A stretch of 64,000 nt of DNA from Haliotis rufescens (Eukaryota), in contig NW_025964112.1 in the NCBI RefSeq assembly GCF_023055435.1, positions 13,020,001 through 13,084,000 of the forward strand. Reading direction: 5' to 3'. The notes beneath the pieces are model-generated. The model did not search any database and was not told where the DNA came from. It was given only the letters and a program-made list of their open reading frames with translations. Of this stretch, positions 282 through 50,572 are shown piece by piece. How positions within the stretch are numbered: the stretch's first letter is position 1; every line of letters begins with the position of its first letter. The position numbers were made by a program, and so were the translations under genes.

Positions 282-499
282 GAGACACAATGCATGTGAA
301 GTCTGTCAGGAAATGGTTAGGGTCGTGATGGAGACAACCTAGTTGAGGAGAGATGGAGGGGGTTGTGCCAGGTCAGATTCCCTTACCTGATTTCAACTCG
401 CTTACAATACATCGCTGCAGAAACCATTAATCATATGTTACCAAATTGGATGAAATCATAATTGTTTCACAGAGTTAAATATTTCCATTGTGTTGCCAG

Positions 500-716
500 G
501 TTTCTACTGTGTGTCCAACTCCTCGGACTACCGGAACCAACCATGCCCCATGGGTCATTACTGCCCTGCAGGAACCATGCGCAAGGATGAAAACAAGTGT
601 CCAGTTGGAACGTTCAATCCAGACAACTCCTCCACCAATGCCTCTGCTTGTCTCCCATGCACAGCTGGTTTCTACTGTCAGACAGAAGGGTTATCTGACC
701 CTACTGGCCAGTGCAG
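500..716 (+). CDS. Exon 1 (in window), Cys-rich repeats
   Basis: ccag|GTTTC...TGCAG|gtagtg; GFYCVSNSSDYRNQPCPMGHYCPAG. Confidence 0.85.
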
Positions 717-3700
717 GTAGTGACCCTTTTGTCAGCTTAGTTCAGCTAATAAAGGAAGCCTGAAAATGATATAATAATGAGTTTTCCTTGGGCAGTGTGG
801 CAAAAGCACCAAAATTCTCTGTGCACTCTGAAGTATCAGGATCTGCTGATTGTGTGTTTAAATCCCAAATTGACAGTATTTGTCTTGTCAACACCATATC
901 CATGCTCATGAGTGTTATAGATAAAACTGAATGATCTTTCCCCTTTAACACAATATGACATGATAAAATTCAAGTATGGTTCAAAGTGTTGAGAACCCAA
1001 CTCACTAAAGATTTGCCAAATGGGTAAAAAATTGGTTCTTTTTTGCCCCAAATCCTTTTGTAAGTCTCATGTGTCATAATGAAAAGTTTGCTTTCTGCAC
1101 CTGGAGCGGTGGGGTTGCCTTGATGTTAAAGCATCCACTTGTGACACCAAAGACCCACATGATTTGCCCATATAGATACAATGTAAGAAACCCATTTCTA
1201 GTGTCCCCTACCATGATATTGCTTGTTTATTGCTAAAAGCAGCATATAGTCATACTTAGTCACTCACTCATAGCATTCTGCTCCCTTCATTCTCCATCGT
1301 TTTGTCCTAGTGTCGGATGGTTCTGCCTTGGTGGCGCTGTCCAGACTAAGCCAACTGACCCAGCTCAGGGCGGGAAGTGTCTACGTGGCCAGTATTGCCC
1401 TGAGGGAAGCGCCAACTATACTCTCTGTGATGGCGGCAAGTACTGTCAGCAGGAGAGACTGGGAGAACCCACAGGAAACTGTACACAAGGTGGGTGGGGC
1501 TCTCCCTGTCTGGTCACATGGCAGGACATGTCATTTCTTGAATGCCCTCAGGAAAATGTAGGCAAATTATTTTGTGTGTTTAAGACGTAAAGCGGTTGTC
1601 TATAATTTTGGCTGATACTTGATAGTAAACAATGGTGTCTATTCTTTATCAGAATGAGTTGCATCCCTTTGTTGTGCCATGATCTGATGAATTTTGAATA
1701 TGTCAAGGACCAAACTGTTCAAACAGCATCAGACAAATTATTAAAAAGCACTTCAGCAAGACAAAATTGTTTTTAGATGTGTATACTTATGATATACAGA
1801 TTTATTAACCGGAATGTTTCTCTGTACTTCCATTAAAATCTCCTTGAAATTAACCTATTATGCTTGTCGACTAATGGGATCGGGACTTTGATGCCAATTG
1901 CGTTGATTGATGCTCATGATATCAATGACTGGATTGTCTGGTCCAGATTCGATTATTTACAGACTGTCGTCATATAGCTGTAATATAGCTGAGTGTGGCA
2001 TAAAACAACAGAAAACATACAAACAAACCTATTGTAAATAAGTAATATTGGACCTGATGTTTGTACGTATGGTAAATACTGAATGGTGTACATACCGTTG
2101 ATGTGGTTGACAAGTGTCTCATGCTGGCTATGTCCTACCCCCCCAGGGTACTACTGCATCCAGGCAGCAGAGTTCTACCGCCCCACTGATGGAGTGACTG
2201 GGGATATCTGCCCCATGGGGCACTACTGTCCCGTGGGAAGCCCTGGGCCTGTACCATGTCCGATAGGCTACTACCTGGACAGCACACGGAACAGTGACCC
2301 TTCCGCCTGCAAGATCTGCACACCAGGTGAGATGGTCATTGTATGTTATAGTCTTTGGAACCTCAGCTACTATTGCAATTTCATTTAAGATTTAATTACT
2401 ATTTTTGTGAGGTTAAGGCATAATTTTGCTGCTATGAAACTTTTTGTGACTGCAGTTTCTCATTTCAAGAGAAAAATAGAAATAGAACTTTCCTTGCTCA
2501 CCTAACCATTGGTTCCAGTACTTGACCTTTATTTGCGACTACAGAAGTAGAAATTACCTAGGATATTACCAAGCGTTAGTCACGCATTCCACAACTGTCA
2601 TTGTGAGTCCAGTGTGAATTCACAAAAGTAATTTATAGGTCTCAAAATCATTTTCGACAACCAGTTATTATTGGACTCCATGTTCCCATGTTTAAGCATT
2701 CCACTGAGTTTCTGCAGCACACCATTGGTCCATCATGTCTCCCCCATGTTCTCTGCAGGCAAGTACTGTGAACAAGAAGGGCTAGAAACACCAAATGGGG
2801 ACTGTGCCCCTGGCTTCTACTGCCCAGCAGGGGCCATCGTGGCGACGCCCGGCAACAACTCCTGCCAACCCGGCTACTACTGCGTGGGCGGTAAAGAGGC
2901 TGCCGTTGCCTGCCCTGCCGGATCCTACCAGGTACACAATCAGCACATCGCCTTGCCTTGCTGTCACACCTGTCCTTAATCATCCTTCACTTGAAAGATT
3001 GATGTTACTTTTAATATAGCCAGAATGGACTCTGCTTATAGCCAAGATTTTTTATGATTATTATGGAATGACTTTTATAGCTTTTATTTACATATTGAAA
3101 CCCATTAAAGGCCACCAATAAGAATAAGAATGTTATCTGATATGGTATTATTTGTCTCCAAACATTTTTTACGTTTAAAAAACAACCTTAGGTACCTTTT
3201 TGAAATCAATTTCCAAATAAGTCTAATTGATACTTATTGTAATGATACCTATTGGTCTCCTTGCCCCTGCACATTGTTCCACCGTTTTTACCATTGTTCT
3301 ACCTGTTACAACCGTTGATCTACCTGCCATACTCATTGTTCTACCTGCCATGCTCATTGTTCTACCTGTTTTTACCACTGTTCTACCTCTTACAACCATT
3401 GGTCTACCTGCAATGCTCATTGTTCTACCTGCCATGCTCATTGTTCTATCTGTTTTTACCACTGTTCATCCTGTTATAACCATTGTTCTACCTGCCATGC
3501 TCATTGTTCTATCTGTTTTTACCACTGTTCATCCTGTTATAACCATTGTTCTACCTGCCATGCTCATTGTTCTACCTGTCTTTACCACTGTTTTTCCTGT
3601 TATAACCATTGTTCTACCTGCCATGCTCATTGTTCTACCTGTTTTTACCACTGTTCATCCTGTTATAACCATTGTTCTACCTGCCATGCTCATTGTTCTA

Positions 3701-6700
3701 CCTGTTTTTACCACTGTTCATCCTGTTATAACCATTGTTCTACCTGCCATGCTCATTGTCCTACCTGTTTTTACCACTGTTCATCCTGTTATAACCATTG
3801 TTCTACCTGCCATGCTCATTGTTCTACCTGCCATGCTCATTGTTCTACCTGTTTTTACCACTGTTCATCCTGTTGTTACCATTGTTCTACCTGCCATGCT
3901 CATTGTTCTACCTGTCTTTACCACTGTTTTTCCTGTTATAACCATTATTCTACCTGCCATGCTCATTGTCCTACCTGTTTTTACCACTGTTCATCCTGTT
4001 ATAACCATTGTTCTACCTGCCATGCTCATTGTTCTACCTGCCATGCTCATTGTCCTACCTGTTTTTACCACTGTTCATCCTGTTATAACCATTGTTCTAC
4101 CTGCCATGCTCATTGTTCTACCTGCCATGCTCATTGTTCTACCTGTTTTTACCACTGTTCTTCCTGTTGTAACCATTGTTCTACCTGCCATGCTCATTGT
4201 TCTACCTGCCATGCTCATTGTTCTACCTGTTTTTACCACTGTTCTTCCTGTTGTAACCATTGTTCTACCTGCCATGCTCATTGTTCTACCTGCCATGCTC
4301 ATTGTTCTACCTGTTTTTACCACTGTTCTTCCTGTTGTAACCATTGTTCTACCTGCCATGCTCATTGTCCTACCTGTTTTTACCACTGTTCTTCCTGTTG
4401 TAACCATTGTTCTACCTGCCATGCTCATTGTCCTACCTGTTTTTACCACTGTTCATCCTGTTATAACCATTGTTCTACCTGACATGCTCATTGTTCTACC
4501 TGCCATGCTCATTGTTCTACCTGTTTTTACCACTGTTCATCCTGTTGTTACCATTGTTCTACCTGCCATGCTCATTGTTCTACCTGCCATGCTCATTGTT
4601 CTACCCACTATGTTCCTGTAGGATCTGCCCCAGCAGACAGACTGTAAGGTGTGCCCTGCCGGCTTCTACTGCAATGCCACTGCAGGCCCCGTGGTCAGGT
4701 ACGATGGAACCATCTGCCCAGAGGGCTACTACTGCCCTAACGGCACACAGTATGCCGACCAGTATCCGTGTCCACTGGGAACATACAACAACAGGACAGG
4801 TAATGTCACTGATGGCAGGTCATTCTACTTACGATTATGTTCACTCAGTTTAATGACAGCAGAAACTTGCCGTGTTCAAGTAAATGGTAGCAGTCCAATT
4901 TGGGGTAACAAAACGCTTTAGGTGCAGCATAGCTGAAGGGCTACAGTTAAAGGATAGCTGAAGGATTTGGTAAGAGCTTTGCTGACGTCTTATGCTGGAA
5001 CATTGCTGGAGGGCTATGATAGAGCTGTGCTGTGGGGCCTTGGTTAGAGCTGTGCTGTGGGGCCTTGGTAAGAGCTGTGCTGAAGTCTATGCCGGAACAT
5101 TGCAGGAGGGCTATATTAGAGCTGTGCTGTGGGATCATGGACAGAGCTCTGCTGAAGTCTTATGTTGGAACATTGATGAAGGGCTATGTTAGAGCTGTGC
5201 TGTGGGGTAATGGACAGAGCACTGCTGAAGTCTTATGCTAGAACATTGCAGGGGGGCTATGTTAGAGCTGTGCTGTGGGATCATGGACAGAGCTCTGCTG
5301 AAGTCTTATGCTCGAACATTGTTGAAGGGCTATGTTAGAGCTGTGCTGTGGGGTAATGGACAGAGCTTTGCTGAAGTCTTATGCTGGAACATTGTTGAAG
5401 GGCTATGTTAGAGCTGTGCTGTGGGGTCATGGACAGAGCTCTGCTGAAGTCTTATGCTGGAACATTGCTAAAGGGCTATGTTAGAGCTGTGCTGTGGGGT
5501 CATGGACAGAGCTCTGCTGAAGGGTCTTATAAGAACATCACTGATAAGTTGTTGGTATTTCAGGCCTCACCAACGTGAGTGAATGCTCCGTGTGTGTCGG
5601 TGGAATGGCATGTGACATGGAAGGCCTCACCTACCCCATCAGACCTTGTGATGACGGCTACTTCTGCCGAGAAGGTGCAACATCAACAACTCCTAGTCAA
5701 GGTATGCAGCATTGTGTGACTAGCTTTACATATCTAAAGGCATACAGTTTTTAAAGAGTAAAGGAGACTGGGGTATAAAAGTTTCAAGCTAATCAATTCA
5801 TTTGAAACTATGTATTAAAATCACTGTCAGTGCCTGCATACACCATCTTTTGATATTTGAGGGAAGGCATTGTCAGATGTTCCTGGTTGTAATAGAATTG
5901 ATTTAGCTTATCATTGAGCAGTACTGACCATTGTTACAATGAAATGGCTCTTTTTACCATGACTTTGAACAATATTACGATAACATGAACACTTGTTGCT
6001 ATAACACTGACCTTTATATAATACCATTCTGTTGTCCTCCACCAGGAGTCCAGGCAGACATCTGTCCGACGGGCTACTTCTGTCCTCAGGGGACTGACGA
6101 CCCTCTGCCGTGTCCTCAGAGGACCTACAACCCAAACACCAACATCTACAGGGAGGACCAGTGTGTCAACTGTACTGGAGGATCCTACTGCAACCAAACA
6201 GGTGCTGTAGGCAAACAAAGTAGCCTGCCAGGCAGTGTCTGGAGTATAGTGATACTCACAAATATACATGTTTTAACATCATCATTACCAGGACAGCGAC
6301 AGGTCCCGGATTTCTCAAGAGTCGGGTGCACACTACCCAAGTTACTAGTATTTAAGATGTGGATGTTTAAGTTGCTAAGGTGCATCCCCTTGGTTTTAAC
6401 ATAGGAAGAGGGGAGTTGAGGAGGCACACACGGTTTGGGGGTGCTTATTAGGTTGAATACAGTAATGGCAAAATGATAGAGATTGCACACTTTGCTGTTC
6501 TTGCAGCCCTAGAAGAGACACAGTAAAACATGGTTGCTGTGGTTGTATGTTCACATTTTGTCAGGCTTGCTTTCACATGCCAGTTGGCATAACCATGGGA
6601 ACCTGAACAGCTTGAAAAAAATGTGAGATCTTCAACCCAGATTCCCTTTCATACCCCCTCATTCTAAGTACCAAAAACTTGCACTATAGATGGTGATAAA

Positions 6701-42700: not shown

Positions 42701-45700
42701 TATTCCCCCACTGAGGCCCTCACCAAGCAGTATGAGGCCGAGGCACGCAAGGCTGCAGAGGAAGCCCGGAAGTACAAGGAGGACGTGATGAAGAAGATGC
42801 AAGCAGAGTTGGAGAGGAGGAAGAGAGAGCAGAAGGAACGTGAGGAAGAACGCAAAAGCAAGATTCTCAATCAGCTTCAGTAAGTTGTGATGTTTCTGCC
42901 TGCATTTTTTGTGTATATACTTTGTTTGTAATTGTTTCTACTTTGTGTAAGCATTATGATTTGATTAAGAAACGGGATGCATTTCTTATTGGAAAATAAA
43001 TGGTGAATAAAAGAACCATCTCAGGACAGAACAGGGTTTCGTCAACCTGTGGTTCAAGTAAGATGCAACTAAAATGTTGACTGGATGGTCACAACGAGAT
43101 TGGTAGGGAGTTAACAATATGAGAGACTCTGGTTGTTGATTCATTATCATTATGTTGGGGCAGTAGGTTAGCCTAATAGTAAAAGCACTGGCTGGTCAAG
43201 ACGGTAACCATGGTTTAATGCCCCATGTGAGTAAAATGTGTGAAATAATTGTTGTGTGTTGCTTGTATGTGACTGAATAGGGCTAAAAGGAGCTTATCAA
43301 GTTGAAACGCTTATGTGTTTGCAGACAGCTCGAGAAGGACTTGGAGGAGGAGCACCAGCGTGAAGTGAACCGTCTTCGAGAGAGGGAAGCAGACCGAGAG
43401 AAACTCCGCCAGCAGCAGATGGAAGAGAACGCCAGGAGACAGAAGCAAGAGATTGAGCAATCCAGTGCCAGTGAGCAGGAGAAGGCCAAACTGCTGAGGG
43501 AACACAACAAGAACATCGAGAAACTGGAGTCTAACTCCCAGAATGAGCGGGAACGGCACAGAGCTGCCTTACAGGCCAAGCTGGATGCCAGGAAGAAGCA
43601 ACGTATGGGAGCAGAGGTTGCCAAACTGGACAAACAGTCCCAGCTAGAAGCTGATGAGGAGATGAGGAACGAGATGGCTCAGAGACAGCAGGAGATGACA
43701 CTGCAGTCCGGGTTTACCTCACTGCAGGGCAGCACAACAACCGATCCTGTTCCTGACAGCGGGTTTGAGAGTACAGGGAACAGGGAACAGGACTGGGTGA
43801 ATCTGCTAATGGCTTCGCCTCTCTTCAAGCAGATCAACGATCTTGAGGCTATGTTGGACAAATCGAGTGGCACCGGATCTGGTCCAGCCACATCAGACAA
43901 GATACTGGGTAGGTTATGATCTGATGTAATTATTAAATAAATTATTGATTTGTTCATCATATATTTTTAATCAAACTTGAGATTTTATATGACAGTTATA
44001 TGTCTTTTAAAATAGAAAGGTCTTGATTTTGAGATTATTTGAATAAGAAATTTTTAAGTGGGCAAATGAACAGTTGATTGTTATATATTTTTACGTACAT
44101 GTACCTATATTAATACCTACAGATAGTGATGTACTGTGAAAACTTGTTCTGGAGACAAAAGTATTTGCACCAAAGTGGTCAACATCTGAGACCTCCATGG
44201 CTTTAGCTCTGCCTTTAGCTGACAAGCCTTGACTGAAATAGTGTTCAAAGTGGCCTTACACTTAAATCACTCACTCTTTGTTTGTACCTAGAGTATAGCT
44301 TTTGTCAACCATGTTGTTGCTGTAGCGCTATGTATTGTGTGTGTCCTCCAATAGACTGTGATCCCTTATGTGTGCCAGAATCCTATGATTTGGCCTGATC
44401 ATGTTTCTCGGTTTGTCAGCACCATACCTGGATTTCATCAAAGGGGTATATATAAAGAAAATACAGTTCAAAGTGACATTAAGCCAAACCTCACTCACTC
44501 ACTCACTCGGGGGCACAGTCGTCTAATGCGCCGTGATTCGCTGTGCAGAGTTGCGTCCCTTGGGCATGCCAGAAACCTATGATTGTGGGTTCGAATCCCA
44601 GTTCGCCCCAATTATGTTTCTAGGTTTGTCAACACCATACCCGTGCTCATGGGTTTCACCGAAGTGGTAAACATCTGAGACCTGCATCACTTCGGGCTTT
44701 CCTCCCGCATTAAGCTGACACACCATGATATAACTGGAATACTGTTAAAAGCGGCGTTAAACCCAACTTACTCACTCACTCACTCACTCACTCACTCACT
44801 CACTCACTCACTCTGTCCTTGCTTCCAGGTGGGGACTACAGCAAGCCGTACATTGACGTGAAGGATGCCCAGTGGTCCTGCAACGGGGACCTCAAGCCCA
44901 CAGACATCAATGGCATCAGTCCAAGTCAGTTCGTCATCTACAGGTTTGGCGTGTTCGTCATCAGACTCTTGAACCAGACAATCGGAACACCTGAAGTCAC
45001 TCTGCTCCTTGCCTCAAGTCTTCCAAAGAACAATTATGAGAGGAATGCTTTCAGGAACTCCATATTCTATGAGCATTCTCGGAAGATTTTGTTTGTGAGG
45101 AAGGAAAGAATGGAATCGATCGGGGACTTTGTTGTAGTAATTCTGCACTCCCTTGCTCACATCAAGGTTGGGGATATGACAGATGATGGAAATGTCCTCT
45201 TTATGAGAGAGTTCTATAAGGTGAGGTATCTCAGGAGGGTGTTTTCACCTATCGCAGACACCATTGTGTGTAATATGTTCTTGTGGATTAGTTTTCTTTA
45301 CCAAAGTAGTGACTACAAAAATGTGTTTAGTCATAAAGAACTCTGTGAGTTCAGAAGGAAACCCTTAAAATCATAACTCAGTAATAATTCATCTTTGATT
45401 TTCATGCTGTGTACGAAAAAAATGAAATGGTTAGCAACAGAACACGTTAAATTAAGATTTATCCTGCCTCCTCACTTTAGAATATAAACATCTGTGGAAC
45501 AATGTATCATTTTCTCCGGGGTTTTTTTCTTTCTTAGGCAATGAAGATCATGTGTCAAGACATGTTCTTCTCAAGAACACAGAACACAAGCCGAGCTCAC
45601 TCTCTGATTGGCTCATCCAGTCCCAGACCAGCCCTGGAGATGGCGCTGGCTGGCACCAAGAACCCTGATGACAGGATGAACGTCATCGGGGAGATGATTG

Positions 45701-48700
45701 ACATGAAAGTCGACAGTCCAGCCCGAACTAACTTCTCAACCCAGGTAAGACAATTTGAAATATTCTGTAGAGTGTTGTGGTCCCTTTCATACTTTGACCA
45801 CTTCTGGATTCCAGGACGGAGTAGGTCACAAGCAGTACATCTTTTGCAAGTTCATAACAGAGGAGCAATGTTGGAAGTAGACTGGTGCTTAGATTACACT
45901 TTGTTTTATTCATGGTCTACAGATGTTTGCTCTCCAGTTAGTTAGTTAGTTCAGTTGAATTGAGATTAAATTAATGATTTGTTGCAGATCATTATTTCTT
46001 TCTTTTTATTTTTCATGAAAATATTTTGGTCATTGCTTCCCGTAGGGAACAGTAAATGCTTATGACATTTAACATGCAGGATGTTGTGTTTTTAGGGCTT
46101 TAGAAGAGGCTTGCATAAGCCAGAGAATACCGTATTTTCTTGAGTATAGTGCTCATCCAAGTATAATGCGCACGCCACTCTAGCAAATTCTGTTTTGAAG
46201 GGAAAAAATCCAATATTATGTGCAGAAAAAAATTACACCGCATCTCTTCAGTGAACTCTGGTAAACAAACGGGTGAAACGAAACTTGGTCAGTACAAATT
46301 TGAATGCCTTTATCCAAGTATCATTTTTGAAATGTTACACATGTAGTTACTTTTATCCCTCGATATGCCAAGGAGAGGCGAGACATGGGCCACCAAGCTG
46401 TCGATGCCCATGCCTTTAATAAAACACAAGATGAGATTAAATGGCCGAGGGTGTGCAGGTACTACTGGGATACTAAGCTGCTAGTCGGGTATCCCAAAAT
46501 GCTACCGTTGCCATGGCCACTAGCGTGGCCAATGGGGATTAGCAGCAAGCGCTGCTGGCCTGAGACCGCTACCGCTGACCGGCCCCCATGGTAGCATATT
46601 TATATGCTACCATTGCTTGGCAACTACCACGCTGTCATAAGCAGCTAACGCTGCTGGCCTATGTCAGACTACCGCTGCCCGGCCCCATTAGTAAAACCAT
46701 TGTCATGACCACCACCGGGAGCCCAACTGTCAGCTACCGCTTGACAAGACGACTTCCGCCGCCGGGCCCATATACGTGGCAATTGGTTGCCCGACGTAAG
46801 CTATTTTACGATTCTCCAGGAAAACCAAGGTTCCCACTGAGAAGCAGTTAATCCCGGAAAGGTTCCCGCTGAAAGGCAGGTAGCCCTAAGTGCAAGTATT
46901 AATTTGGAAGCAAGTTAACTTGTTACTAGCAGTGTAGCCCACCCAGAACTCCACCACAAATTCCACTATTATGCGCAGACAAAAATTACACCACATCTCT
47001 TCAGCGAAGTCCGGTAAACGAACCGGTGGTAAGAAACTTGGTCAGTAGAAAATTGAATGCCTTTATCCAAGTATCATTTATAAAATGTTACACATGTAGT
47101 TACTTTTATTTGGTATGATTTTTGTAGTTGTATCTTTATATTTTTCCCAATAAATCTAACAAAGTTCAGACAAAAATAATTAATCTAAACTGGGTGACTG
47201 ACTACCTGATAACCTAACTCTTAGCTACAACAAAGTTGGTGTAGTGAGATGTGGTAGAGGCAGCCCTGTAGTTAAGGCACTTGCCTGTCTCATCGATGCC
47301 TGGGTTCAATGCCCACAATGTGTGAAGCCCTTAGTTGATGTTCTGCACTGTGCTTATAATGGGTGCCCGAAACTGAGATCCGTTTCTTGATTGATCTTAT
47401 TAATAAAGTGTAAATACCAATGTATTCACTCCTCCAGACAATCACACAGCGAATGTATGGCTACCAGGCCATGGCCAACAACGCCAGACTGCGGCAGTAC
47501 CTTGCTTCTAAGGGTGGTTTCATGACGTCAAGCGACATCATCAGCAGTCGGATGTCGGAGTTGCGGGGAGGCATTCCAAGTCCCTCACATACCCCACGAA
47601 GGTAGGACTGCATGGAGATAATATCTCATGGCTCTTTGATTAGTGGGCTTCTTAATTAATTTATGTGGCTAAATACAGTTTAATATGATGTCAAGGTGAC
47701 TAGGGGGGCAAATTGGCATGAAAAAGAGAGGGGAGGGAAGAAAGGGAGAAGGAAAGAGAGTCACAGAAATATACATACACAATTTATAAATATATGTAAT
47801 TGATATAATAAAAGTAACTATTGATCAGGTCAACTTCAATTTTGACCATTTCTCCTTGTAGCATTTGTTGTCTTTACCATATTGATATTTACCAAATGAT
47901 TTTCTAACTTGTTTGACTTGGGGTTTCTAAGTATAAATGACATTTGACATGTTTCTAAAGGTGTGTCAGTTATTCCTCAATAGCATTCTTCAAATGAATC
48001 TTATGATTATGTGAAATAGTAAATGTTCAAGTAAGATTATCGCTCAAATGCTGCTGGTGTGACTTAAAATTTCAATGCACTCACTATCTCTGGCTAATTT
48101 TTTATGCAGTATTTGTAGAAGGAAAAGATTGTAGAAGGAAACCTAGTGCTTAAAGCGTTCACTCGTCATGCCGAAGACCTGGGTTCAATTCCCGACATGG
48201 GTACAATATGTGAAGCCCATTTCTGGTGTCCCCCGCCATGATATTGTTGGAATATTGCTAAAAGCAGCATAAAACCATACTCACTCATTCATTAATGTTA
48301 AAAAGTTTTATGATATTATGCCAGCTTAGAGTACCTGTTTAAACACAATGATAGCATTGTTATTATGCTCCCTTGTCTTCAGAGTGGAAACCTAAAAATA
48401 ATCATTGAATTGCACTATGTCTTCCAGCCCCTTGAAGCGGCGCGGCATCCCAGCCCTATCTACAGTGAAGGATGTCCTGGACTCCCAGCTGCTGGAGCTA
48501 CAGACCAACAATGACTCCCTCAATGCTGAACTCATGCAGGTAAGGGGGTCATCAAGGACACTGTTGCCAATCATCTGGGTTTCTATAGTAACAAAGGGGG
48601 CCTAGTTGTCTAAGGCGCCGGAATAGGATGTGCAGAGTTATGTCCCATTCGCAAGTCAGAAACCTGTATTCCAGGGTTTAAATACTGAGGATTACATTTC

Positions 48701-49338
48701 TAGATTTGTGTACCTTACCATTGTGGTAAACATCTCAGTCTTGCATCGTTTCAAGCTTTCCTCCAACATTGAGCTGACATGGCGTGGTATAACTAAAATA
48801 CAGTTCAAAGTGACATTAAATCTCACACTCACTCACTCACTGTAAACAAAGCCCCTGTGGGGATTCAAGGGCAGAACATATCGCCATTTTATGTTAGATG
48901 TCACTGAATTGTCTCCCTTAGCCATGCCAGGATCTTTGGATGATGGGTACAAATCTCTTATTCACCCTACTTATGATCCTCGATTTGTCACCCTGCCCAT
49001 GTGGGTATTGTCAATGTCTGCACCTGCATCAGTTTGGGCTTTTCTTCCATGTTAGGCTGGCACGCCATGATTTGTCTGAACTACTGTTCCAAGCAGCAAA
49101 AAACAACAAAGAAGAGTCAGATGACATCTTTGTTTTCTTCTTGCAGACAATGAAAACAGAAGCTGAACTTCGTGCCGGAATCCAGAAACTGGAATCTGCA
49201 GGAGATAACGAACAGCTGACAGCCTCACATGAACAGCTGACTGGAATACTTGTGAAAAAGGAGACCCTGGTGAAGAAAATCTCTTACATTGAAGCTGACA
49301 TTGCTCAGAAAGAAAAAGCAGTTAAGAAGAAGAAGTAA
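500..49338 (+). CDS. Giant multi-exon gene (5'-partial, 53 exons in window, about 4,560 codons): Cys-rich GCC2/GCC3 (ephrin-receptor-like) repeat ectodomain, single TM helix, very large cytoplasmic region (PxTG repeats, coiled coils, zincin-like module)
   Basis: Hand-spliced AG/GT-bounded exons with matching phases. Exon lengths sum to 13,679 nt; adding the upstream G gives 4,560 codons ending KEKAVKKKK-TAA at 49336-49338. Confidence 0.9.
1311..1489 (+). CDS. Exon 2, Cys-rich repeats
   Basis: cctag|T GTC GGA...CAA G|gtgggt; (S)VGWFCLGG...KCLRGQYCPEG; this frame is not in the ORF track. Confidence 0.85.
2147..2326 (+). CDS. Exon 3, Cys-rich repeats
   Basis: cccag|...|gtgaga; GYYCIQAAEF...ICPMGHYCPVG. 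Confidence 0.88.
2759..2931 (+). CDS. Exon 4, Cys-rich repeats
   Basis: tgcag|...CAG|gtacac; GKYCEQEGLETPNGDCAPGFYCPAG. Confidence 0.85.
3270..4612. repeat. Intronic minisatellite of 21-bp variants forming 63/84-bp higher-order units
   Basis: cattgttctacctgccatgct / cattgttctacctgtttttac / cactgttcatcctgttataac. Confidence 0.95.
4622..4799 (+). CDS. Exon 5, Cys-rich repeats
   Basis: tgtag|...|gtaatg; DLPQQTDCKVCPAGFYCNAT. Confidence 0.85.
4965..5540. repeat. Intronic tandem repeat, about 73-bp unit, about 7 copies
   Basis: gggctatgttagagctgtgctgtggggtcatggacagagctctgctgaagtcttatgctggaacattg. Confidence 0.9.
5564..5701 (+). CDS. Exon 6, Cys-rich repeats
   Basis: ttcag|...|gtatgc; GLTNVSECSVCVGGMACDMEG...CDDGYFCREG; absent from the ORF track. 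Confidence 0.85.
6046..6201 (+). CDS. Exon 7, Cys-rich repeats
   Basis: accag|...|gtgctg; GVQADICPTGYFCPQG. Confidence 0.8.
6799..7047 (+). CDS. Exon 8, Cys-rich repeats
   Basis: ttcag|...|gtcagt; GLSAPSGLCNEKYYCPKG. Confidence 0.88.
7456..7608 (+). CDS. Exon 9, Cys-rich repeats
   Basis: tacag|...|gtgagc; GYYCPAGSSVETQIVCPA. Confidence 0.88.
8097..8259 (+). mobile_element. tRNA-derived SINE, family A
   Basis: A box (tagcctagtggt), B box (ggttcaattcc), tRNA-Asp-like gtcacg loop, (ACTC)n tail, approximate TSD tccatgttt(g)aaagg. Confidence 0.85.
8430..8624 (+). CDS. Exon 10, Cys-rich repeats
   Basis: tccag|...|gtacga; GYYCIPELTVAG...CPEGFFCPNG. Confidence 0.85.
9311..9813 (+). CDS. Exon 11, Cys-rich repeats
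   Basis: tacag|...CAG|gtaggt (an in-frame alternative GT lies 6 nt upstream); GSNLTTPSGQCSPGFYC. Confidence 0.85.
9951..10042 (+). repeat. (ACTC)n microsatellite expanded from the tail of a truncated family A SINE
   Basis: About 23 ACTC units, preceded by the SINE body fragment tacaatgtgtgaagcccatttctggtgtc (from about 9908). Confidence 0.9.
10448..10796 (+). CDS. Exon 12, Cys-rich repeats
   Basis: tacag|...|gtaggt; PSSNGGRCQPGFFCPVG. Confidence 0.88.
11110..11403. repeat. 72-bp tandem repeat x4
   Basis: attgtctagttatctgtcagccacgttgtcccacagtattcttatatattgcgtaactctatcagtcaatgt. Confidence 0.9.
11894..12052 (+). CDS. Exon 13, Cys-rich repeats
   Basis: tccag|...|gtgaga; GFYCPGGQTIPRPYEYLCPEGHYC. 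Confidence 0.88.
12113..12409 (+). mobile_element. tRNA-derived SINE, family B
   Basis: tRNA-Leu-like head (ggtggcccagtcgtctaaggcgcc...gtgggttcgaatccc), shared 3' tail, (ACTC)n, TSD ctttatagtaggg. Confidence 0.87.
12995..13226 (+). CDS. Exon 14, Cys-rich repeats
   Basis: cacag|...GG|gtgagt; GYFCDNNLAPVG...CPAGYYCP. Confidence 0.85.
13215..13965 (+). repeat. 84-bp tandem repeat containing the exon 14 donor, decaying toward the 3' side
   Basis: gctgg|gtgagtgg...ttcagatcttgtcagaggttcagatcttg...gagcactggtctgc; GT at 13227, 13311, 13395, 13479, 13563, 13647. Confidence 0.9.
14268..14467 (+). CDS. Exon 15, Cys-rich repeats
   Basis: cctag|T TAC...|gtgagt; (G)YYCESGTVEPNP...CPIGNYCPEG. Confidence 0.88.
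14579..15030 (+). mobile_element. Helentron-associated (HINE/DINE-1-like) non-autonomous element
   Basis: 5' atacccctgtt with a nearby inverted copy, (GTCC)n microsatellite, 3' aacaggggtat plus gtgagc-ttt-gctcac hairpin, T-rich flanks. Confidence 0.7.
15092..15262 (+). CDS. Exon 16, Cys-rich repeats
   Basis: ttcag|...|gtaggt; GHSDPCDAGFICLVG...CPIGHYCPSG. Confidence 0.85.
15565..15891 (+). CDS. Exon 17, Cys-rich repeats
   Basis: aacag|GTGAGT...|gtgagg; GECLPCPAGQSCPQLG. Confidence 0.8.
16679..16936 (+). CDS. Exon 18, Cys-rich repeats
   Basis: ctcag|...|gtacta; GTLKEQACPQG...CPAGYYCPEKTG. Confidence 0.83.
17080..17426 (+). mobile_element. Two head-to-tail family A SINEs (17080-17240, 17241-17426)
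   Basis: Two full copies; the second begins directly after the ACTC tail of the first. Confidence 0.88.
17510..17716 (+). CDS. Exon 19, Cys-rich repeats
   Basis: gccag|...|gtgagt; GTYQPQEGASSCEPCPAGKFC. Confidence 0.88.
18331..18471 (+). CDS. Exon 20, Cys-rich repeats
   Basis: cccag|...|gtaagt; GKYCIDGRITADCAAGYFC. Confidence 0.88.
18623..18876. mobile_element. hAT-type MITE
   Basis: TIRs cagtgttcgaaataa / ttatttcggacattg; 8-bp TSD (c/t)gtgtaca. Confidence 0.7.
18918..19087 (+). CDS. Exon 21, Cys-rich repeats
   Basis: cccag|...|gtatga; GTLMPLKCPES...CLAGHYCPVG. Confidence 0.85.
19253..19895 (+). mobile_element. HINE/DINE-1-like element with internal repeats of about 169 bp
   Basis: ttatcccctgccc...ggcggggtata, (GT)n, core repeats at about 19375/19544/19712, 3' gggcgggggata plus atagatgac-ttt-gtcatctat hairpin. 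Confidence 0.75.
20295..20559 (-). mobile_element. Family C element
   Basis: Reverse complement of the 37521 copy with the same 5' end. Confidence 0.82.
20723..20910 (+). CDS. Exon 22, Cys-rich repeats
   Basis: ttcag|...AG|gtaaga; PCPPTTYNDEEGG...CPPGYFC; absent from the ORF track. Confidence 0.87.
21223..21374 (+). CDS. Exon 23, Cys-rich repeats
   Basis: tccag|A GAT...|gtcaga; (R)DAIAAGSVDDCTLCPAGFYC. Confidence 0.83.
21849..21986 (+). CDS. Exon 24, Cys-rich repeats
   Basis: tccag|...|gtgaga; GYYCNMSMTMKPCPPGYYCPNG. Confidence 0.87.
22144..22492. mobile_element. Tc1/mariner(pogo)-type MITE
   Basis: TA-flanked TIRs cc(g/a)tattcgacgtaataagcgccc / gggcgcttattacgtcgaatacgg. Confidence 0.8.
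22845..23099 (+). CDS. Exon 25, Cys-rich repeats
   Basis: ttcag|...|gtagag; GAIEPKKCPLG...SYPCPP. Confidence 0.85.
23466..23596. other. Assembly gap (131 N) at the tail of a degenerate family B SINE
   Basis: N run directly after ...ataactggagcactgttaaaag. Confidence 0.95.
23626..23796 (+). mobile_element. SINE family A
   Basis: Full length; TSD ctcagttaaagag. Confidence 0.88.
23856..24079 (+). CDS. Exon 26, last canonical Cys-rich repeat
   Basis: cacag|...CAG|gtgaga; GYFCPAGSFAPSPCRPGTYQ. Confidence 0.87.
24077..24572 (+). repeat. 33-bp tandem repeat containing the exon 26 donor
   Basis: cag|gtgagacaaacatgacattcctcagatgaa repeated more than 10 times. Confidence 0.9.
24810..24971 (+). CDS. 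Exon 27, Cys-rich linker
   Basis: tgcag|...|gtgagt; PSDRTCPCKAGY...YCSEK. Confidence 0.87.
25751..26120. mobile_element. Tc1-type MITE
   Basis: tactcaccgccaaaagaaa ... tttcttgtggcggtgagta inverted termini with TA ends. Confidence 0.65.
26208..26399 (+). CDS. Exon 28
   Basis: tgtag|...|gtaaga; VCDGVTSYRGFDKSLGLCLC...CNLECR. Confidence 0.85.
26996..27375 (+). CDS. Exon 29, contains the GRRRLL motif
   Basis: tccag|...AG|gtagga; SQIPSK...GRRRLL...NPTVCL...HYPVYD. Confidence 0.87.
27800..27962 (+). CDS. Exon 30, juxtamembrane beta domain
   Basis: tacag|G AAT...|gtgagt; NNLYNTNSDFDYGGFRAL...FTEPGVYVF; absent from the ORF track. Confidence 0.85.
28714..28902 (+). CDS. Exon 31, transmembrane helix
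   Basis: tccag|...|gtaaga; ends WTIIFILLGAAFLVMVLMVILL. Confidence 0.88.
30041..30236 (+). CDS. Exon 32, end of TM and start of cytoplasmic region
   Basis: tgcag|...|gtagga; VLFRKYGWTKTSY...YASKGSTVHPVKKYHR (positive residues inside). Confidence 0.85.
30571..30965 (+). CDS. Exon 33, coiled coil
   Basis: tttag|...|gtaata; in-frame alternative AGs end at 30576 and 30579; DEFWDYDRQVDLE. Confidence 0.82.
31421..31694 (+). CDS. Exon 34
   Basis: catag|...|gtcagt; VNYQACLREG...RIGAWGILGQGTGG. Confidence 0.85.
32000..32227 (+). CDS. Exon 35, PxTG repeats
   Basis: tctag|...|gtaaga; DSKTGLIRP, HPQTGRVLPI. Confidence 0.88.
32607..32942 (+). CDS. Exon 36, PxTG repeats
   Basis: ttcag|...|gtagat; NPHTG, HPKTG, DPVTG, DQETG. 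Confidence 0.85.
33337..33582 (+). CDS. Exon 37
   Basis: tgcag|...|gtagga; GVVVPVGG...DSLSGKLV. Confidence 0.85.
33711..33884 (+). CDS. Exon 38
   Basis: tgcag|...|gtaagt; GQENSNVS...ATGGCP. Confidence 0.85.
34249..34419 (+). CDS. Exon 39, PxTG repeats
   Basis: ggcag|...|gtgaga; GMYEFSKTGQLLPILIG. Confidence 0.85.
34647..36664 (+). CDS. Exon 40 (2 kb), last PxTG repeats, coiled coils, GQ-rich linker
   Basis: cgtag|...AAG|gtttgt; corresponds to the 679-aa ORF 34679-36718. Confidence 0.9.
36969..37217 (+). CDS. Exon 41, coiled coil
   Basis: ttcag|...CAT|gtacga; DQQQKVQEQ...KLMAKIAARKR. Confidence 0.8.
37521..37781 (+). mobile_element. SINE-like non-autonomous retroelement, family C (no tRNA head)
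   Basis: Starts GACCCGTGAAG, ends gctggaatattgctgagtgcggcgttaaacaacaaacc; TSD tcatatg(g/t)ggtct. Confidence 0.82.
38535..38768 (+). CDS. Exon 42, coiled coil
   Basis: tccag|...|gtgagt; VSGGNAAAAE...VQKKL. Confidence 0.85.
39752..39922 (+). CDS. Exon 43, coiled coil
   Basis: tgcag|...|gttggt; ALDALKDKHE...RQKKALMDK. Confidence 0.85.
40345..40500 (+). CDS. Exon 44, coiled coil
   Basis: cccag|...|gtgaca; IALRRQQKMQQ. Confidence 0.83.
40947..41213. mobile_element. Second copy of the same MITE, internally deleted
   Basis: Same TIRs and interior as 22144-22492, lacking about 80 bp. Confidence 0.8.
41476..41661 (+). CDS. Exon 45, coiled coil
   Basis: ttcag|...|gtagtg; GKDGHVAEN...VLRQRHMKE. Confidence 0.85.
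41933..42019 (+). CDS. Exon 46
   Basis: ttcag|...|gtgagt; ELMDLVANAG...QKQQE. Confidence 0.85.
42132..42242. mobile_element. Short palindromic MITE (related fragments at 25070-25182, 29115-29201, 42262-42326)
   Basis: gggcccacttgcacaaagcgat ... atcgctttgtgcaagtgggtcc. Confidence 0.65.
42551..42879 (+). CDS. Exon 47, coiled coil
   Basis: tccag|...CA|gtaagt; KQLEDFDQ...REEERKSKILNQL. Confidence 0.85.
43325..43908 (+). CDS. Exon 48, coiled coil
   Basis: tgcag|A CAG...|gtaggt; QLEKDLEEE...LQAKLDARKKQR. Confidence 0.87.
44509..44813 (+). mobile_element. SINE family B nested in the tail of older degenerate copies (about 44160-44508)
   Basis: Near-identical to the 12113 and 56475 copies; long ACTC tail ends 15 nt before exon 49. 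Confidence 0.87.
44829..45220 (+). CDS. Exon 49, globular C-terminal module with HSLAH
   Basis: tccag|...|gtgagg; NAFRNSIFYE...ILFVRKERMESIGDFVVVILHSLAHI. Confidence 0.88.
45538..45744 (+). CDS. Exon 50
   Basis: cttag|...|gtaaga; AMKIMCQDMFFSR. Confidence 0.85.
47438..47601 (+). CDS. Exon 51
   Basis: tccag|...AG|gtagga; TITQRMYGYQ. Confidence 0.82.
48142..48290 (+). mobile_element. SINE family A (5' clipped)
   Basis: Matches the family A body and tail. Confidence 0.8.
48428..48539 (+). CDS. Exon 52
   Basis: tccag|C CCC...|gtaagg; (S)PLKRRG...DSLNAELMQ. Confidence 0.83.
48597..48841 (+). mobile_element. Degenerate SINE family B
   Basis: gtctaaggcgcc...tgtgcagagtt...gagctgacatggcgtggtataact...ctcactcac. 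Confidence 0.7.
49147..49338 (+). CDS. Exon 53 (terminal coding), ends KKKK-stop
   Basis: tgcag|ACA ATG AAA...AAG TAA. Confidence 0.85.
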   Translation, partial: TMKTEAELRAGIQKLESAGDNEQLTASHEQLTGILVKKETLVKKISYIEADIAQKEKAVKKKK

Positions 49339-50530
49339 ACGTTACGTAGTCAGCATTCCACTGTCAGGTCTTGCTGTATTTATGAATTGTAATCATCAAA
49401 AATAGAGATCTTAAATTATACTGAATGAAGACAGTAAGACAATTAAATTATCAAACATTAAAGAATATCAAACATGTCTTTATCTTTGTAATACTCAATA
49501 GATCAGCATTAGTAACACTACTTTCATTTACAATGAACTTTGATTTGAACATTTATTCTGTACATACTTACAGCATTATATTTGAGCATGTTTATTGCCC
49601 ACTGAGCATTGCAATGAAAATGTGTACATGAAGGTCAATATCAGCTTATCCAATGACAAGACCTCTCTGAGGTTAACTGTGATTTCTATATTGTTATTTC
49701 AAATTTATTAACTTTTGTTATTATTTATTTGTATGACATATTTTTTATATATCATGTCTTTTTTATGTTATGTCTTTTACGATGTCTCACAGTTCCGTCC
49801 AATGGGAAATGACAATATGTTACAACAAAAATGATGACGAGGCCATGCTAATTGTAGAATAGTTCAATATCCTTTATGGAGGTTGAGAACAGTTTGTTGT
49901 TGTAACAGTTGATTTGTAAATAATGGTGGATTGCTTTACATATTTTCTCTCTGAGAAAATGACGGATACAATTGCATTTCCGAAGTCAGTAATAATTCTA
50001 AATGTGATATTTAGCAAATTTATATTTTTTACTTCAGTGGAAAAGGGATTTATGTTTTGTGTTCTTTTTGTCAACTGACTTGTTTTTAAATGTTATATTT
50101 TTCTTACTGTCCTACTGTAATATGAGTTATATGTCCTGACACTATAGATCAGTAGAAGATATGGCATTGTATTGTCACAATGAGATGAAAACATATTATT
50201 CCATTGTTTTAAAGAATGTTGATTTTTTGCATATCAAATTTACAACTACACTGAGGTGTTATGTGCAGAATTTCTTAAAAAGGAACGATTTATCATGGTT
50301 ATCTCCCTTTATGGAATTCTCTCCTCTGTTTATGATGAGAAGTCGGTGTCCACGAAGCACATCTGTGATTGCCGGGGTTTCCAGCATTATGTATATTTCC
50401 AAAGAATTCCTTGTTGATAAGTGCCAGTTTTCTACAAGAGTTTTGTCTAAATATATAGTTTTGTATAGGTGAATGGTTGAGGTTATGACAATGCTCATAT
50501 TGACATAATGAAATGTTTTGATACATTTGA

Positions 50531-50572
50531 AATAAAGTCTATTTCTTAATGCAAAACTGTTGTGTGTGTTAT
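50531..50572 (+). terminator. Probable polyadenylation signal of the giant gene (3' UTR about 1.2 kb)
   Basis: AATAAA at 50531-50536 followed about 20 nt later by a GT-rich element (tgttgtgtgtgtt), after an AT-rich UTR-like stretch. Confidence 0.55.

What the first reader, a model, noticed from the sequence alone, without database searches (positions are those of the whole stretch)
500..49338. Giant uncharacterised single-pass receptor: Cys-rich repeat ectodomain linked to a modular cytoplasmic tail of about 2,360 aa
Seen: 53 in-phase exons give more than 4,500 aa with the N-terminus still missing. The order is about 1,900 aa of CPxGxYC repeats with many N-glycosylation sequons, RRRLL, a beta domain (YPVY..NLYNTNSDFDYG.F...F..PGVYVF), one TM, PxTG repeats, coiled coils and a zincin-like module. 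Known: GCC2/GCC3 (ephrin-receptor-like, PF07699) arrays occur in protist surface proteins such as apicomplexan/ciliate CRMPs, which act in sensing-triggered exocytosis but are multipass. Inference: this is an ancient, patchily retained receptor family with no kinase domain, possibly a ciliary or sperm-flagellar sensor or tether. I recognise no named gene with this layout.
Basis: partly seen in the sequence, partly recalled or inferred. Interest (0 to 1): 0.8.

Follow-up and report, generated by a model that had tools for sequence, protein, structure and literature searches.

The report
Giant single-pass abalone membrane protein gene
The window holds the back half of one real, transcribed gene for a membrane protein of about 9,000 residues; it belongs to an unnamed family found from protists to birds, which nobody seems to have studied and which ends in a protease-like domain lacking the catalytic glutamate.

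Summary
My own model gives 53 in-phase exons from 499 to the stop at 49336-49338. That is 4,586 codons with no internal stop, one transmembrane helix and a cytoplasmic tail of about 2,367 aa.

Spliced transcript contigs from four studies join the outer domain, the membrane exon and the tail, so this is one gene. The assembly gap lies in an intron.

The gene is much larger than reported. One transcript contig is 28.2 kb, and Cys-rich exons continue about 89 kb upstream. The whole protein is therefore about 9,000 aa.

The layout recurs in oyster, Lingula, a crinoid, an ichthyosporean, Fabomonas and Percolomonas. Non-mammalian vertebrates carry a version with a short ectodomain ('si:dkey-103g5.4'). 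All members are labelled uncharacterized, and I found no paper on them.

The C-terminal module is predicted with high confidence to have a zincin fold, closest to Wss1 (Z 9.3). It keeps H-x3-H...D but never has the catalytic Glu.

An RRLL motif outside the membrane is conserved back to protists and fits the site-1 protease consensus.

My reading is a cleaved surface tether or scaffold receptor. A role in cilia is untested. An earlier, unchecked note of this scan (s1-810389) reports another giant Cys-rich receptor elsewhere in this genome.

The parts
499..26399 (+). 28 exons of the Cys-rich repeat ectodomain (the part inside the window). The units are of the CPxGxYC type, about 10% Cys, with many N-x-S/T sequons. 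The array continues upstream of the window to about -88,600.
   Evidence: Pfam PF07699 scores 26.7 bits (cut-off 23.1) on exon 23856-24079 and is below the cut-off elsewhere.
23466..23596 (.). Assembly gap inside an intron. It is flanked by SINE-like repeat and no coding sequence is lost.
   Evidence: The exons on either side map to adjoining oyster residues, 3603-3694 and 3692-3768. The flanks were read.
26996..27375 (+). Exon 29. It marks the end of the repeat array and the start of the conserved domain next to the membrane, and it ends in HYPVYD.
   Evidence: It is collinear with oyster, Lingula, crinoid and protist proteins.
27242..27256 (+). RRRLL motif, a candidate site-1-protease-type (R-x-L-L) processing site outside the membrane.
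   Evidence: R-[RK]-[LI]-[LI] is aligned in oyster, Lingula, crinoid, Fabomonas, Chromosphaera and Percolomonas. The match to the S1P consensus rests on my own knowledge.
27800..27962 (+). Exon 30, the second half of the domain next to the membrane (NLYNTNSDFDYG...PGVYVF).
   Evidence: RNA joints. It is conserved in vertebrates and protists.
28714..28902 (+). Exon 31. It holds the last outer residues (ending in PDW) and the only transmembrane helix, at 28837-28899.
   Evidence: Mean Kyte-Doolittle hydropathy over 19 residues is 3.27 against at most 1.4 elsewhere. All 15 homologues checked have one internal TM preceded by a PDW-like motif (PDW in most).
30041..31694 (+). Exons 32-34, the conserved segment just inside the membrane. 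It carries R-K-x-G-W, YRHL (30092-30103, of the YxxPhi type), YASKGS, and EFWDYDRQVDLESF (30597-30638).
   Evidence: RNA joints. Conservation reaches Fabomonas and Chromosphaera.
32000..34850 (+). Exons 35-39 and the start of exon 40.
   Evidence: In the zebrafish homologue model the region is all short beta strands, with pLDDT about 80-90. It is conserved in protists.
34850..35600 (+). Conserved helical region after the repeats. It forms a four-helix bundle in the homologue model.
   Evidence: The fold matches are generic helical bundles.
35600..43908 (+). Charged spacer rich in Glu, Lys, Arg and Gln, of coiled-coil type with a Gly/Gln-rich stretch, spanning exons 40-48. Its end carries the conserved SPLF helix that leads into the module.
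   Evidence: It is collinear with the oyster and Lingula proteins. No Pfam family matches.
44829..45220 (+). Exon 49, a zincin-fold module without the catalytic Glu. HSLAH is at 45146-45160 and the conserved Asp lies within 45176-45190.
   Evidence: 532 cluster representatives have E<=0.001. The motif was counted in 134 homologues. Model pLDDT is 95-98. All top domain matches are zincins, with Wss1 at Z 9.3.
45538..49338 (+). Exons 50-53 (45538-45744, 47438-47601, 48428-48539, 49147-49338). They hold the helices that follow the module, the terminal coiled coil and the stop codon.
49339..50590 (+). 3' untranslated region of about 1.2 kb.
   Evidence: The 28.2-kb contig runs 6,657 nt past 33583, against 5,426 coding nt. 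A polyadenylation signal lies at 50531.

Best explanation
What it is (shown). The window holds the 3' half of one transcribed gene. The gene spans at least about 138 kb and its mRNA is at least 28.2 kb. It encodes a type I single-pass membrane protein of roughly 8,900-9,000 aa.

The protein belongs to an unnamed family that reaches across eukaryotes. Its vertebrate members are the short-ectodomain 'si:dkey-103g5.4' / LOC proteins.

Order of parts (shown):
- a very long, glycosylated Cys-rich rod;
- a conserved RRLL motif;
- a conserved domain next to the membrane, ending in PDW;
- one transmembrane helix;
- a conserved inner segment with a YxxPhi-type motif and EFWDY..DLE.F;
- about 19 beta-hairpin-like DPxTGxxxPIxG units;
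- a four-helix bundle;
- a charged coiled-coil spacer of more than 1,000 aa;
- a zincin-fold module that keeps H-x3-H...D but has no catalytic Glu;
- a terminal coiled coil.

How it most likely works (inferred). The protein is made in the secretory pathway and cut at RRLL by a site-1-protease-type convertase. This would leave the giant rod attached to a membrane stub.

At the cell surface the rod binds matrix, particles or another cell. The conserved stub, helix and tail couple that contact to the cell cortex, acting as a scaffold rather than through an enzyme cascade.

The Glu-less zincin module would act as a metal-dependent peptide-binding or docking site, not as a standard protease.
For: One gene:
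- Spliced contigs from runs of four studies join exons 27801-27961, 28713-28901 (TM), 30040-30235, 30570-30963, 31419-31693, 31999-32226, 32606-32939 and 33334-33583.
- One of these contigs is 28,231 nt long.
- The oyster protein (6,488 aa) and the Lingula protein (4,184 aa) are collinear with the gene across the membrane exon.

Topology:
- The outer part has 213 Cys and 50 sequons in 2,133 aa. The tail has 10 Cys in 2,350 aa. There is a single hydrophobic peak.
- The same single internal TM is seen in all 15 homologues checked, and four of them also show an N-terminal hydrophobic peak that would fit a signal peptide.

Family:
- 532 cluster representatives match the C-terminal module, including proteins of 3,800-7,500 aa.
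- The protist proteins also match the domain next to the membrane, the segment just inside the membrane, the repeats and the helical bundle.

RRLL: the motif is aligned from abalone to Fabomonas.

Module:
- The model has pLDDT 95-98.
- All top matches that cover the module are zincin catalytic domains. Wss1 gives Z 9.3, rmsd 3.0 over 106 residues. AQ_1354, YbeY, minigluzincins, SPRTN and M1 aminopeptidases give Z 6-8.
- In 134 homologues the first His is present in 133 and the second in all 134, and the Asp is present in 122. The residue after the first His is C, A, S or T in 129 of 134, and Glu is not among the residues counted there.

No enzyme output: Pfam finds nothing in the tail, in this gene or in the homologues.
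Against: - No localisation, ligand, cleavage or metal-binding data exist. Every step of the mechanism is inference.
- The RRLL motif is not visibly kept in the vertebrate members. Percolomonas has RRII instead.
- The fold of the repeat domain could not be assigned. The large model's fold-search hits were taken up by the helical bundle.
- The four-helix bundle matches are generic.
- A Glu-less zincin can still be a hydrolase, as YbeY is, so 'docking only' is not secure.
- The 28-kb contig is an assembly, not a single read.
Confidence: 0.5

Rival explanations
1. A sensor or tether of the ciliary or sperm-flagellar membrane. The rod would project from the ciliary membrane and the coiled-coil tail would dock on the axoneme or its membrane links.
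For: By general knowledge, not tested here, the named lineages with a homologue bear flagella (Percolomonas, Fabomonas, Diphylleia) or make ciliated cells or flagellated sperm (the animals); the lineages come. Whether Chromosphaera has a flagellated stage I do not know. The transcript is present in many abalone RNA runs.
Against: Nothing here points to cilia specifically. No conserved part matches any chain of the many solved axoneme structures by sequence or profile. No mammal is among the 120 listed of 132 relatives of the lungfish protein, although mammals have cilia. No tissue information was available for the runs.
Confidence: 0.15
2. A resident of the Golgi or of a secretory or regulated-exocytosis organelle. 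The Cys-rich part would face the lumen as cargo scaffold or matrix. The long coiled-coil tail would act like a membrane-anchored golgin that tethers vesicles or the cytoskeleton.
For: The very long coiled-coil tail. A YxxPhi-type motif conserved in most lineages about 16 residues after the TM. An RRLL motif that fits a Golgi-resident protease (consensus from my own knowledge).
Against: A glycosylated rod of 6,000 aa that varies greatly in length between lineages (about 150-400 aa in vertebrates, above 4,500 aa in protists and molluscs) looks more like an exposed surface structure under diversifying pressure. No Golgi-targeting domain is recognised in Pfam.
Confidence: 0.2
3. A receptor with a non-canonical enzyme output. 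The Glu-less zincin module would be an active metal-dependent hydrolase (protease or nuclease) switched on by ligand binding or by pulling on the rod.
For: Both His and the Asp are nearly invariant across eukaryotes, which suggests selection on a metal site. YbeY-type hydrolases with H-x3-H and no Glu are among the structural matches (Z 6.5-7.8).
Against: The general base of zincins is absent in every member. The third His of YbeY, WLM and metzincins is absent too. No sequence-level relation to any solved enzyme was found, even with a profile.
Confidence: 0.13
4. A gene-model artefact: two or more neighbouring genes (a secreted Cys-rich protein and a cytoplasmic coiled-coil protein) read as one.
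For: Some database models hold only the tail, for example the lungfish and ray proteins and zebrafish isoform X1. The oyster model starts about 50 kb later than the abalone repeat array does.
Against: Spliced contigs from four studies cross the boundaries from ectodomain to TM and from TM to tail. All reading phases agree. The same joined layout occurs in transcriptome-derived protist proteins.
Confidence: 0.02

Closest known systems
Vertebrate 'si:dkey-103g5.4' / LOC 'uncharacterized protein' genes (fish, lungfish, coelacanth, amphibians, turtles, lizards, birds), and invertebrate LOC134264959 (Saccostrea) and LOC106159584 (Lingula)
   Same: They are true family members. They share the domain next to the membrane, the PDW motif and TM, the inner segment, the DPxTG repeats, the helical bundle and the H-x3-H...D module, and they are collinear with this gene.
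   Different: Vertebrate proteins are 1,100-2,500 aa, and their ectodomain is only a few Cys-rich units plus the domain next to the membrane. The abalone gene carries about 6,400 aa outside the cell, and its repeat array runs some 50 kb of genome (about 7.4 kb of mRNA) further upstream than the oyster model's first residues. None of these genes has a studied function.
Apicomplexan and ciliate CRMPs (cysteine repeat modular proteins), and other PF07699 (Ephrin_rec_like, GCC2/GCC3) proteins such as SVEP1, SCUBE and ELAPOR
   Same: They have long arrays of Cys-rich units of the same general type on the outside of a membrane. One exon here, and several homologues, pass the PF07699 cut-off.
   Different: CRMPs span the membrane several times (my own knowledge), whereas this family has one pass. 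None of the named proteins is known to have this tail. No sequence relation outside the repeats was seen.
Wss1 / SPRTN (WLM and SprT-like), minigluzincins (selecase, abylysin) and other minimal zincins
   Same: They share the fold: a helix, a small mixed sheet, an 'active-site' helix carrying two His four residues apart, and a following helix. Z is 9.3 to Wss1 and 7-8 to the others.
   Different: Here there is no Glu after the first His in any of 134 members, and no third His; an Asp nine residues after the second His is conserved instead. There is no sequence or profile match and no Pfam hit.
YbeY / AQ_1354 (UPF0054 metal-dependent endoribonuclease)
   Same: It has a zincin-like fold with H-x3-H and no Glu. 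Z is 6.5-7.8.
   Different: YbeY's third ligand is a His six residues after the second His (my own knowledge), which is absent here. YbeY is a small soluble enzyme of bacteria and organelles.
Substrates of site-1 protease (SKI-1/MBTPS1) with R-x-L-L sites, such as ATF6, and cleaved two-part surface proteins such as dystroglycan, Notch and transmembrane mucins
   Same: This is a 'works like' comparison only. There is a conserved RRLL on the luminal or outer side at the border between the variable rod and the conserved membrane stub.
   Different: Cleavage has not been shown. There is no SEA, GAIN or Notch-type domain by Pfam. The motif is not obvious in the vertebrate members.

Membership tests
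Unnamed eukaryotic family typified by 'si:dkey-103g5.4' / Saccostrea LOC134264959 | C-terminal module with H-[CAST]-[LM]-[AS]-H...D, matched end to end | tested here: met
   E-values reach 5.8e-58, with 532 representatives at E<=0.001. The motif was counted.
Unnamed eukaryotic family typified by 'si:dkey-103g5.4' / Saccostrea LOC134264959 | Collinear order: domain next to the membrane, PDW, one TM, EFWDY segment, DPxTG repeats, helical bundle, module | tested here: met
   tblastn chains to oyster, Lingula, fish, bird, frog, Chromosphaera and Fabomonas.
Ephrin_rec_like / GCC2_GCC3 repeats (Pfam PF07699) | Score at or above Pfam's gathering cut-off (23.1 bits) | tested here: inconclusive
   One exon scores 26.7 bits. 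Two other ectodomain exons of the five scanned score 16.3 and 16.5 bits, below the cut-off; TNFR_c6 also appears weakly. The crinoid homologue scores 28.6 bits. PF07699 is precomputed for the Chromosphaera and Percolomonas proteins.
CRMPs of apicomplexans and ciliates | Several membrane passes (my own knowledge of the family) | tested here: not met
   There is a single hydrophobic peak in this gene and in all 15 homologues checked.
Zincin metallopeptidases | Zincin fold (helix, sheet, active-site helix) | tested here: met
   The model has pLDDT 95-98. All top domain matches are zincins, with a best Z of 9.3. The model target was a close natural relative (P0005, 64% identical over the exon), not the abalone sequence itself.
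Zincin metallopeptidases | HExxH with a catalytic Glu | tested here: not met
   The residue after the first His is C, A, S or T in 129 of 134 homologues, and Glu is not among the residues counted. Here it is HSLAH.
WLM / SprT-like (Wss1, SPRTN) | Third His ligand after HExxH, and a family-level sequence match | tested here: not met
   There is no His at that place. There is no Pfam hit and no profile match to the PDB chains of Wss1 or SPRTN.
YbeY (UPF0054) | H-x3-H-x5-H | tested here: not met
   The third His is absent. The similarity is structural only, with Z 6.5-7.8.
Receptor kinases or other enzyme-linked receptors | A recognisable catalytic domain in the tail | tested here: not met
   There are no Pfam families in the 13 of the 22 tail exons that were scanned, or in the homologues.
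Site-1 protease substrates | R-x-(hydrophobic)-L motif on the luminal side, actually cleaved | not testable with these tools
   The motif is present and conserved. Cleavage needs an experiment.
Ciliary or flagellar proteins | Presence only in lineages with cilia; localisation to cilia | not tested
   Only a handful of the 532 hits carry species names. No aflagellate lineage was seen, but none could be excluded.

The most novel reading that the evidence does not exclude
This would be a receptor family dating back to the last eukaryotic common ancestor that signals in a way not yet described. Pulling on, or shedding, the giant rod at the conserved RRLL site would switch a cytoplasmic Glu-less zincin module. 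That module would be a non-canonical metal-dependent hydrolase or a metal-gated docking site. The DPxTG beta-hairpin array would be a new cytoskeleton- or membrane-binding fold.
Probability: 0.1. Interest if true: 0.85.

Novelty: new variant of a known kind. Interest (0 to 1): 0.62.

Why it matters
The gene belongs to a large, deeply conserved membrane-protein family that has escaped study, most likely because mammals, and probably the usual invertebrate models, lack it. No Pfam family covers the tail, no structure has been solved for it, and I found no paper on it. Even so, the same order of parts is kept from Percolomonas and Fabomonas to abalone and, in shortened form, to zebrafish, Xenopus and birds.

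The work here makes the family testable in three ways:
- It gives a family signature: PDW, TM, EFWDY..DLE.F, DPxTG repeats, H-x3-H...D.
- It points to a candidate processing site.
- It names tractable model genes: zebrafish si:dkey-103g5.4 and Xenopus laevis LOC108696479.

The zincin module without its Glu, conserved across eukaryotes, is of interest on its own as either an ancient pseudo-protease or a new hydrolase type.

For genome annotation, the abalone gene is about twice as long as the window suggests, at about 9,000 aa.

Tried and rejected
- Pfam on 20 exon translations and six homologues gave nothing in the tail.
- Sequence searches of the PDB with four exons and with a profile of the module found no relative.
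- The ESM Atlas could not read the new sequence. With the lungfish homologue it gave only chance-level hits.
- Two paper searches for the zebrafish gene name gave 0 papers. A general word search gave nothing relevant.
- A word-index search with the Percolomonas C-terminus found only two close relatives, so it added nothing on distribution.
- Fold searches with the 1,089-aa zebrafish model were dominated by the generic four-helix bundle. The DPxTG repeat domain therefore has no fold assignment. Weak Foldseek rows to beta-propellers have probability 0.09 or less and I do not rely on them.
- I tested for a regular super-repeat of the ectodomain with one exon against the 164-kb locus, and the result was inconclusive.
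- I considered and rejected a two-gene artefact, CRMP membership (one TM only), and a standard metalloprotease (no Glu).
Searches were made exon by exon or with natural homologues.

Full report
**Observation**

The + strand of the window carries a long series of exon-sized open segments, and the first 27 kb are full of CPxGxYC-type units.

I then chose GT..AG sites that keep the reading phase.

The model has these features:
- 53 exons from 499 to the stop at 49336-49338.
- 13,758 nt, or 4,586 codons, with no internal stop.
- A cytoplasmic part of about 2,367 aa.
- The outer exons hold 213 Cys and 50 N-x-S/T sequons in 2,133 aa. The tail holds 10 Cys in 2,350 aa.
- Only one stretch is strongly hydrophobic, at 28837-28899.

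**RNA evidence**

Public runs that hold about 28% of the words of 27700-33700 behave like transcriptome assemblies. I laid four of them, from four studies, on 27701-33700. Each has one contig that skips seven GT..AG introns. Each contig joins the last outer exon, the membrane exon and six tail exons.

My splice finder reproduced all seven joints, which lends some trust to the joints it predicts elsewhere. The ectodomain and the tail are therefore parts of one transcript.

One contig is 28,231 nt long. It has 19,547 nt upstream of 27801 and 6,657 nt downstream of 33583. Only 6,305 exonic nt lie between 499 and 27799, so about 13.2 kb of mRNA must lie upstream of the window.

I fetched 100 kb upstream from the same contig of the genome. 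Cys-rich exons on the + strand, and none on the - strand, run back to about -88,600 in window coordinates. One more candidate lies at -94,700.

The arithmetic fits. The oyster protein's first residues map to -38.3 kb. The remaining 7.4 kb of the contig matches the roughly 26 further repeat exons between -88.6 and -38.3 kb.

The whole protein is therefore about 8,900-9,000 aa. The 3' UTR is about 1.2 kb, with a polyadenylation signal at 50531.

**The assembly gap**

The N run at 23466-23596 lies between exon 22845-23099 and exon 23856-24079. These map to oyster residues 3603-3694 and 3692-3768, and to adjoining Lingula residues. Nothing is missing between them.

The letters on both sides of the gap are a SINE-like repeat that is common in this genome. 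The gap is intronic. I did not try to fill it.

**Relatives**

Pfam recognises almost nothing. PF07699 passes its cut-off on one exon (26.7 bits), and no family matches in the tail.

I searched exon 49 (130 aa) against 1.84 billion cluster representatives. It found 532 proteins at E<=0.001 and 42 at E<=1e-30. Several of these are 3,800-7,500 aa long, with the match close to their C-terminus.

Those that carry names are:
- Chromosphaera perkinsii, two proteins of 7,076 and 6,410 aa.
- Fabomonas tropica, 7,499 aa.
- Percolomonas cosmopolitus, 4,727 aa (taxid 63605).
- Diphylleia rotans.
- The crinoid Anneissia japonica, Saccoglossus and Branchiostoma.
- Many vertebrates.

A search with the lungfish protein listed fish (as 'si:dkey-103g5.4'), coelacanth, amphibians including Xenopus, turtles, lizards and birds. 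All are 'uncharacterized'. No mammal is among the 120 listed of 132 hits.

Laid on the abalone locus, the protist and animal proteins match more than the module and the repeats. Several of them also match the domain next to the membrane, the segment after the TM, the DPxTG repeats and the start of the big exon, in the same order.

All 15 longer homologues I checked have one internal TM helix, preceded in most by PDW and followed by a basic G-W segment. Most also have a Y/F-R-x-L motif, and many have YSSKGS and EFWDY..DLE.F. Four have an N-terminal hydrophobic peak that would fit a signal peptide.

The vertebrate members keep only a few Cys-rich units outside the cell. The conserved core is therefore the stub, the helix and the tail, and the rod varies by lineage.

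The abalone genome has a second, distant copy of the module (37% identity), which also carries H-x3-H.

**The C-terminal module**

An alignment of 60 homologues has four invariant residues: a Pro, two His four residues apart, and an Asp nine residues after the second His.

Among 134 of the 150 best hits the motif is H-[CAST]-[LM]-[AS]-H, with the Asp present in 122. No Glu follows the first His in any of them.

I predicted the structure of a natural, correctly spliced close relative (P0005, 395 aa, 64% identical over the exon), because I was not to join exons. The module has pLDDT 95-98. Its order is a helix, three strands, the helix that carries the two His, and a following helix.

Foldseek's best rows are minigluzincins and Wss1, with probability 0.94-0.99 but a weak E-value of 0.045, because the model also contains long helices. 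An exhaustive structural comparison put Wss1 first (Z 9.3, rmsd 3.0, 106 residues). Next came AQ_1354 and YbeY, S. pombe Wss1, abylysin, selecase, SPRTN and the catalytic domains of M1 aminopeptidases. Every match that covers the module is a zincin.

A sequence profile finds none of them.

Membership of any peptidase family fails on the catalytic Glu and on the third His. The near-invariant His, His and Asp argue that a metal site is kept. Whether the module is a pseudo-enzyme or an unusual hydrolase remains open.

**The rest of the tail**

The 'PxTG repeats' are, by eye, about 19 units of 15-17 aa with the consensus DPxTGxxxPIxG. They are spread over exons 35-40.

In a model of the zebrafish isoform (1,089 aa, 44-sequence alignment, mean pLDDT 68.7) this region is made only of short strands, with pLDDT about 80-90. 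A helical hairpin splits it. A confident four-helix bundle follows, then a disordered spacer, and then the zincin-fold module again.

Fold searches with this large model were filled by generic helical bundles, so the repeat domain remains unassigned.

In abalone the spacer between the bundle and the module is a charged, coiled-coil-type stretch of more than 1,000 aa.

**The RRLL motif**

RRRLL (27242-27256) lies at the border between the variable rod and the conserved domain next to the membrane. The aligned residues in other members are:
- RRRLL in oyster, crinoid and Fabomonas.
- RRLL in Lingula.
- RKLL in Chromosphaera.
- RRII in Percolomonas.

From my own knowledge, R-x-(hydrophobic)-L, and RRLL in particular, is the cleavage consensus of site-1 protease (SKI-1). 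That makes a processing step plausible, but it is not shown. The motif is not evident in the vertebrate members.

**Explanation and rivals**

Shown: one gene, type I topology, a conserved order of parts, a zincin fold without Glu, and no recognisable enzyme domain.

Inferred: a surface protein whose giant glycosylated rod is cut from, but stays attached to, a conserved membrane stub. Its tail would work as a scaffold that links outside contacts to the cortex.

I put about 0.9 on the description and about 0.4 on the mechanism.

Rivals:
- A ciliary or flagellar role (0.15). Nothing speaks for it beyond my general expectation that the named lineages build flagella or cilia, which I did not test. 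No mammal appeared among the listed relatives, and there is no match to solved axonemes.
- A Golgi or secretory-organelle resident with a golgin-like tail (0.2).
- An active non-canonical hydrolase output (0.13).
- A two-gene artefact (0.02).

**Novelty**

The gene itself is a member of a family that already sits in databases under placeholder names, so it is not an unknown sequence. As a kind of protein, however, the family is undescribed. There is no Pfam model for its tail, no structure, no name and no paper that I could find.

I rate it a new variant of a known kind (giant single-pass Cys-rich surface proteins), with a tail built from parts that have not been described.

**Context from the scan's notebook**

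Earlier, unchecked notes call this genome red abalone. They also list another 'giant Cys-rich type I receptor' on a different piece. I did not test either point.

**Limits**

- Exons were never joined for a search or a fold.
- The two structure models are of natural relatives, not of the abalone protein.
- Only one 6-kb stretch could be laid against reads.
- Species names are known for only a small part of the 532 hits.

Noticed in passing
window 3-278: About four nearly identical in-frame copies of a 22-24-aa Cys-rich unit (GEGTYIDEERQSTCKVCPAGEG) sit in one open segment at the window start, just upstream of my first exon. This could be a real tandem duplication of an exon end or an assembly artefact. 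The scan has a separate note on it (s1-816523).
   Followed up: no
window 3227-4621, 4986-5575 and 13185-13900: Long minisatellite-like tandem repeats lie inside introns. They are open in two or three frames at once (one gives a 464-aa 'ORF'). They are not collinear with any orthologue and are not part of the gene model.
   Followed up: partly
window about 1890-2030, and the flanks of the gap at 23380-23680: A SINE-like repeat is present. A 140-bp piece at window 1890-2028 has at least 40 copies of 84-92% identity across the genome. A similar-looking element flanks the assembly gap; it contains a tRNA-like GGGTAGCCTAGTGGTTAAAG stretch.
   Followed up: partly
G000:C1:54331111-54331434 (L014:1501-1824): There is a second, distant copy of the Glu-less zincin-fold module in the same genome (37% identity, motif HCLAH). 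It probably belongs to a paralogous gene. Chromosphaera and Diphylleia also have two family members.
   Followed up: partly
upstream loci L003-L012 and window 499-20000: Single ectodomain exons hit the oyster protein at several places roughly 680-690 residues apart. This hints at a higher-order super-repeat of about ten units. A direct test with one abalone exon was inconclusive.
   Followed up: partly
window 58962-61589, - strand: A cluster of overlapping ATG-started open frames lies on the minus strand downstream of the gene. None has a significant Pfam match. It may be a separate gene or a decayed mobile element.
   Followed up: partly
homologues P0159, P0160, P0181, P0253 (turtles, birds): Several sauropsid database models fuse the family member with ankyrin repeats and are named 'NF-kappa-B inhibitor zeta'. 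These are probably merged neighbouring genes, which would place the vertebrate gene next to NFKBIZ.
   Followed up: no
homologue P0244 (zebrafish isoform X1, 1,089 aa): This isoform starts inside the repeat region and has no TM helix or ectodomain. A soluble, tail-only form may therefore exist in vertebrates, or the model may be partial.
   Followed up: no
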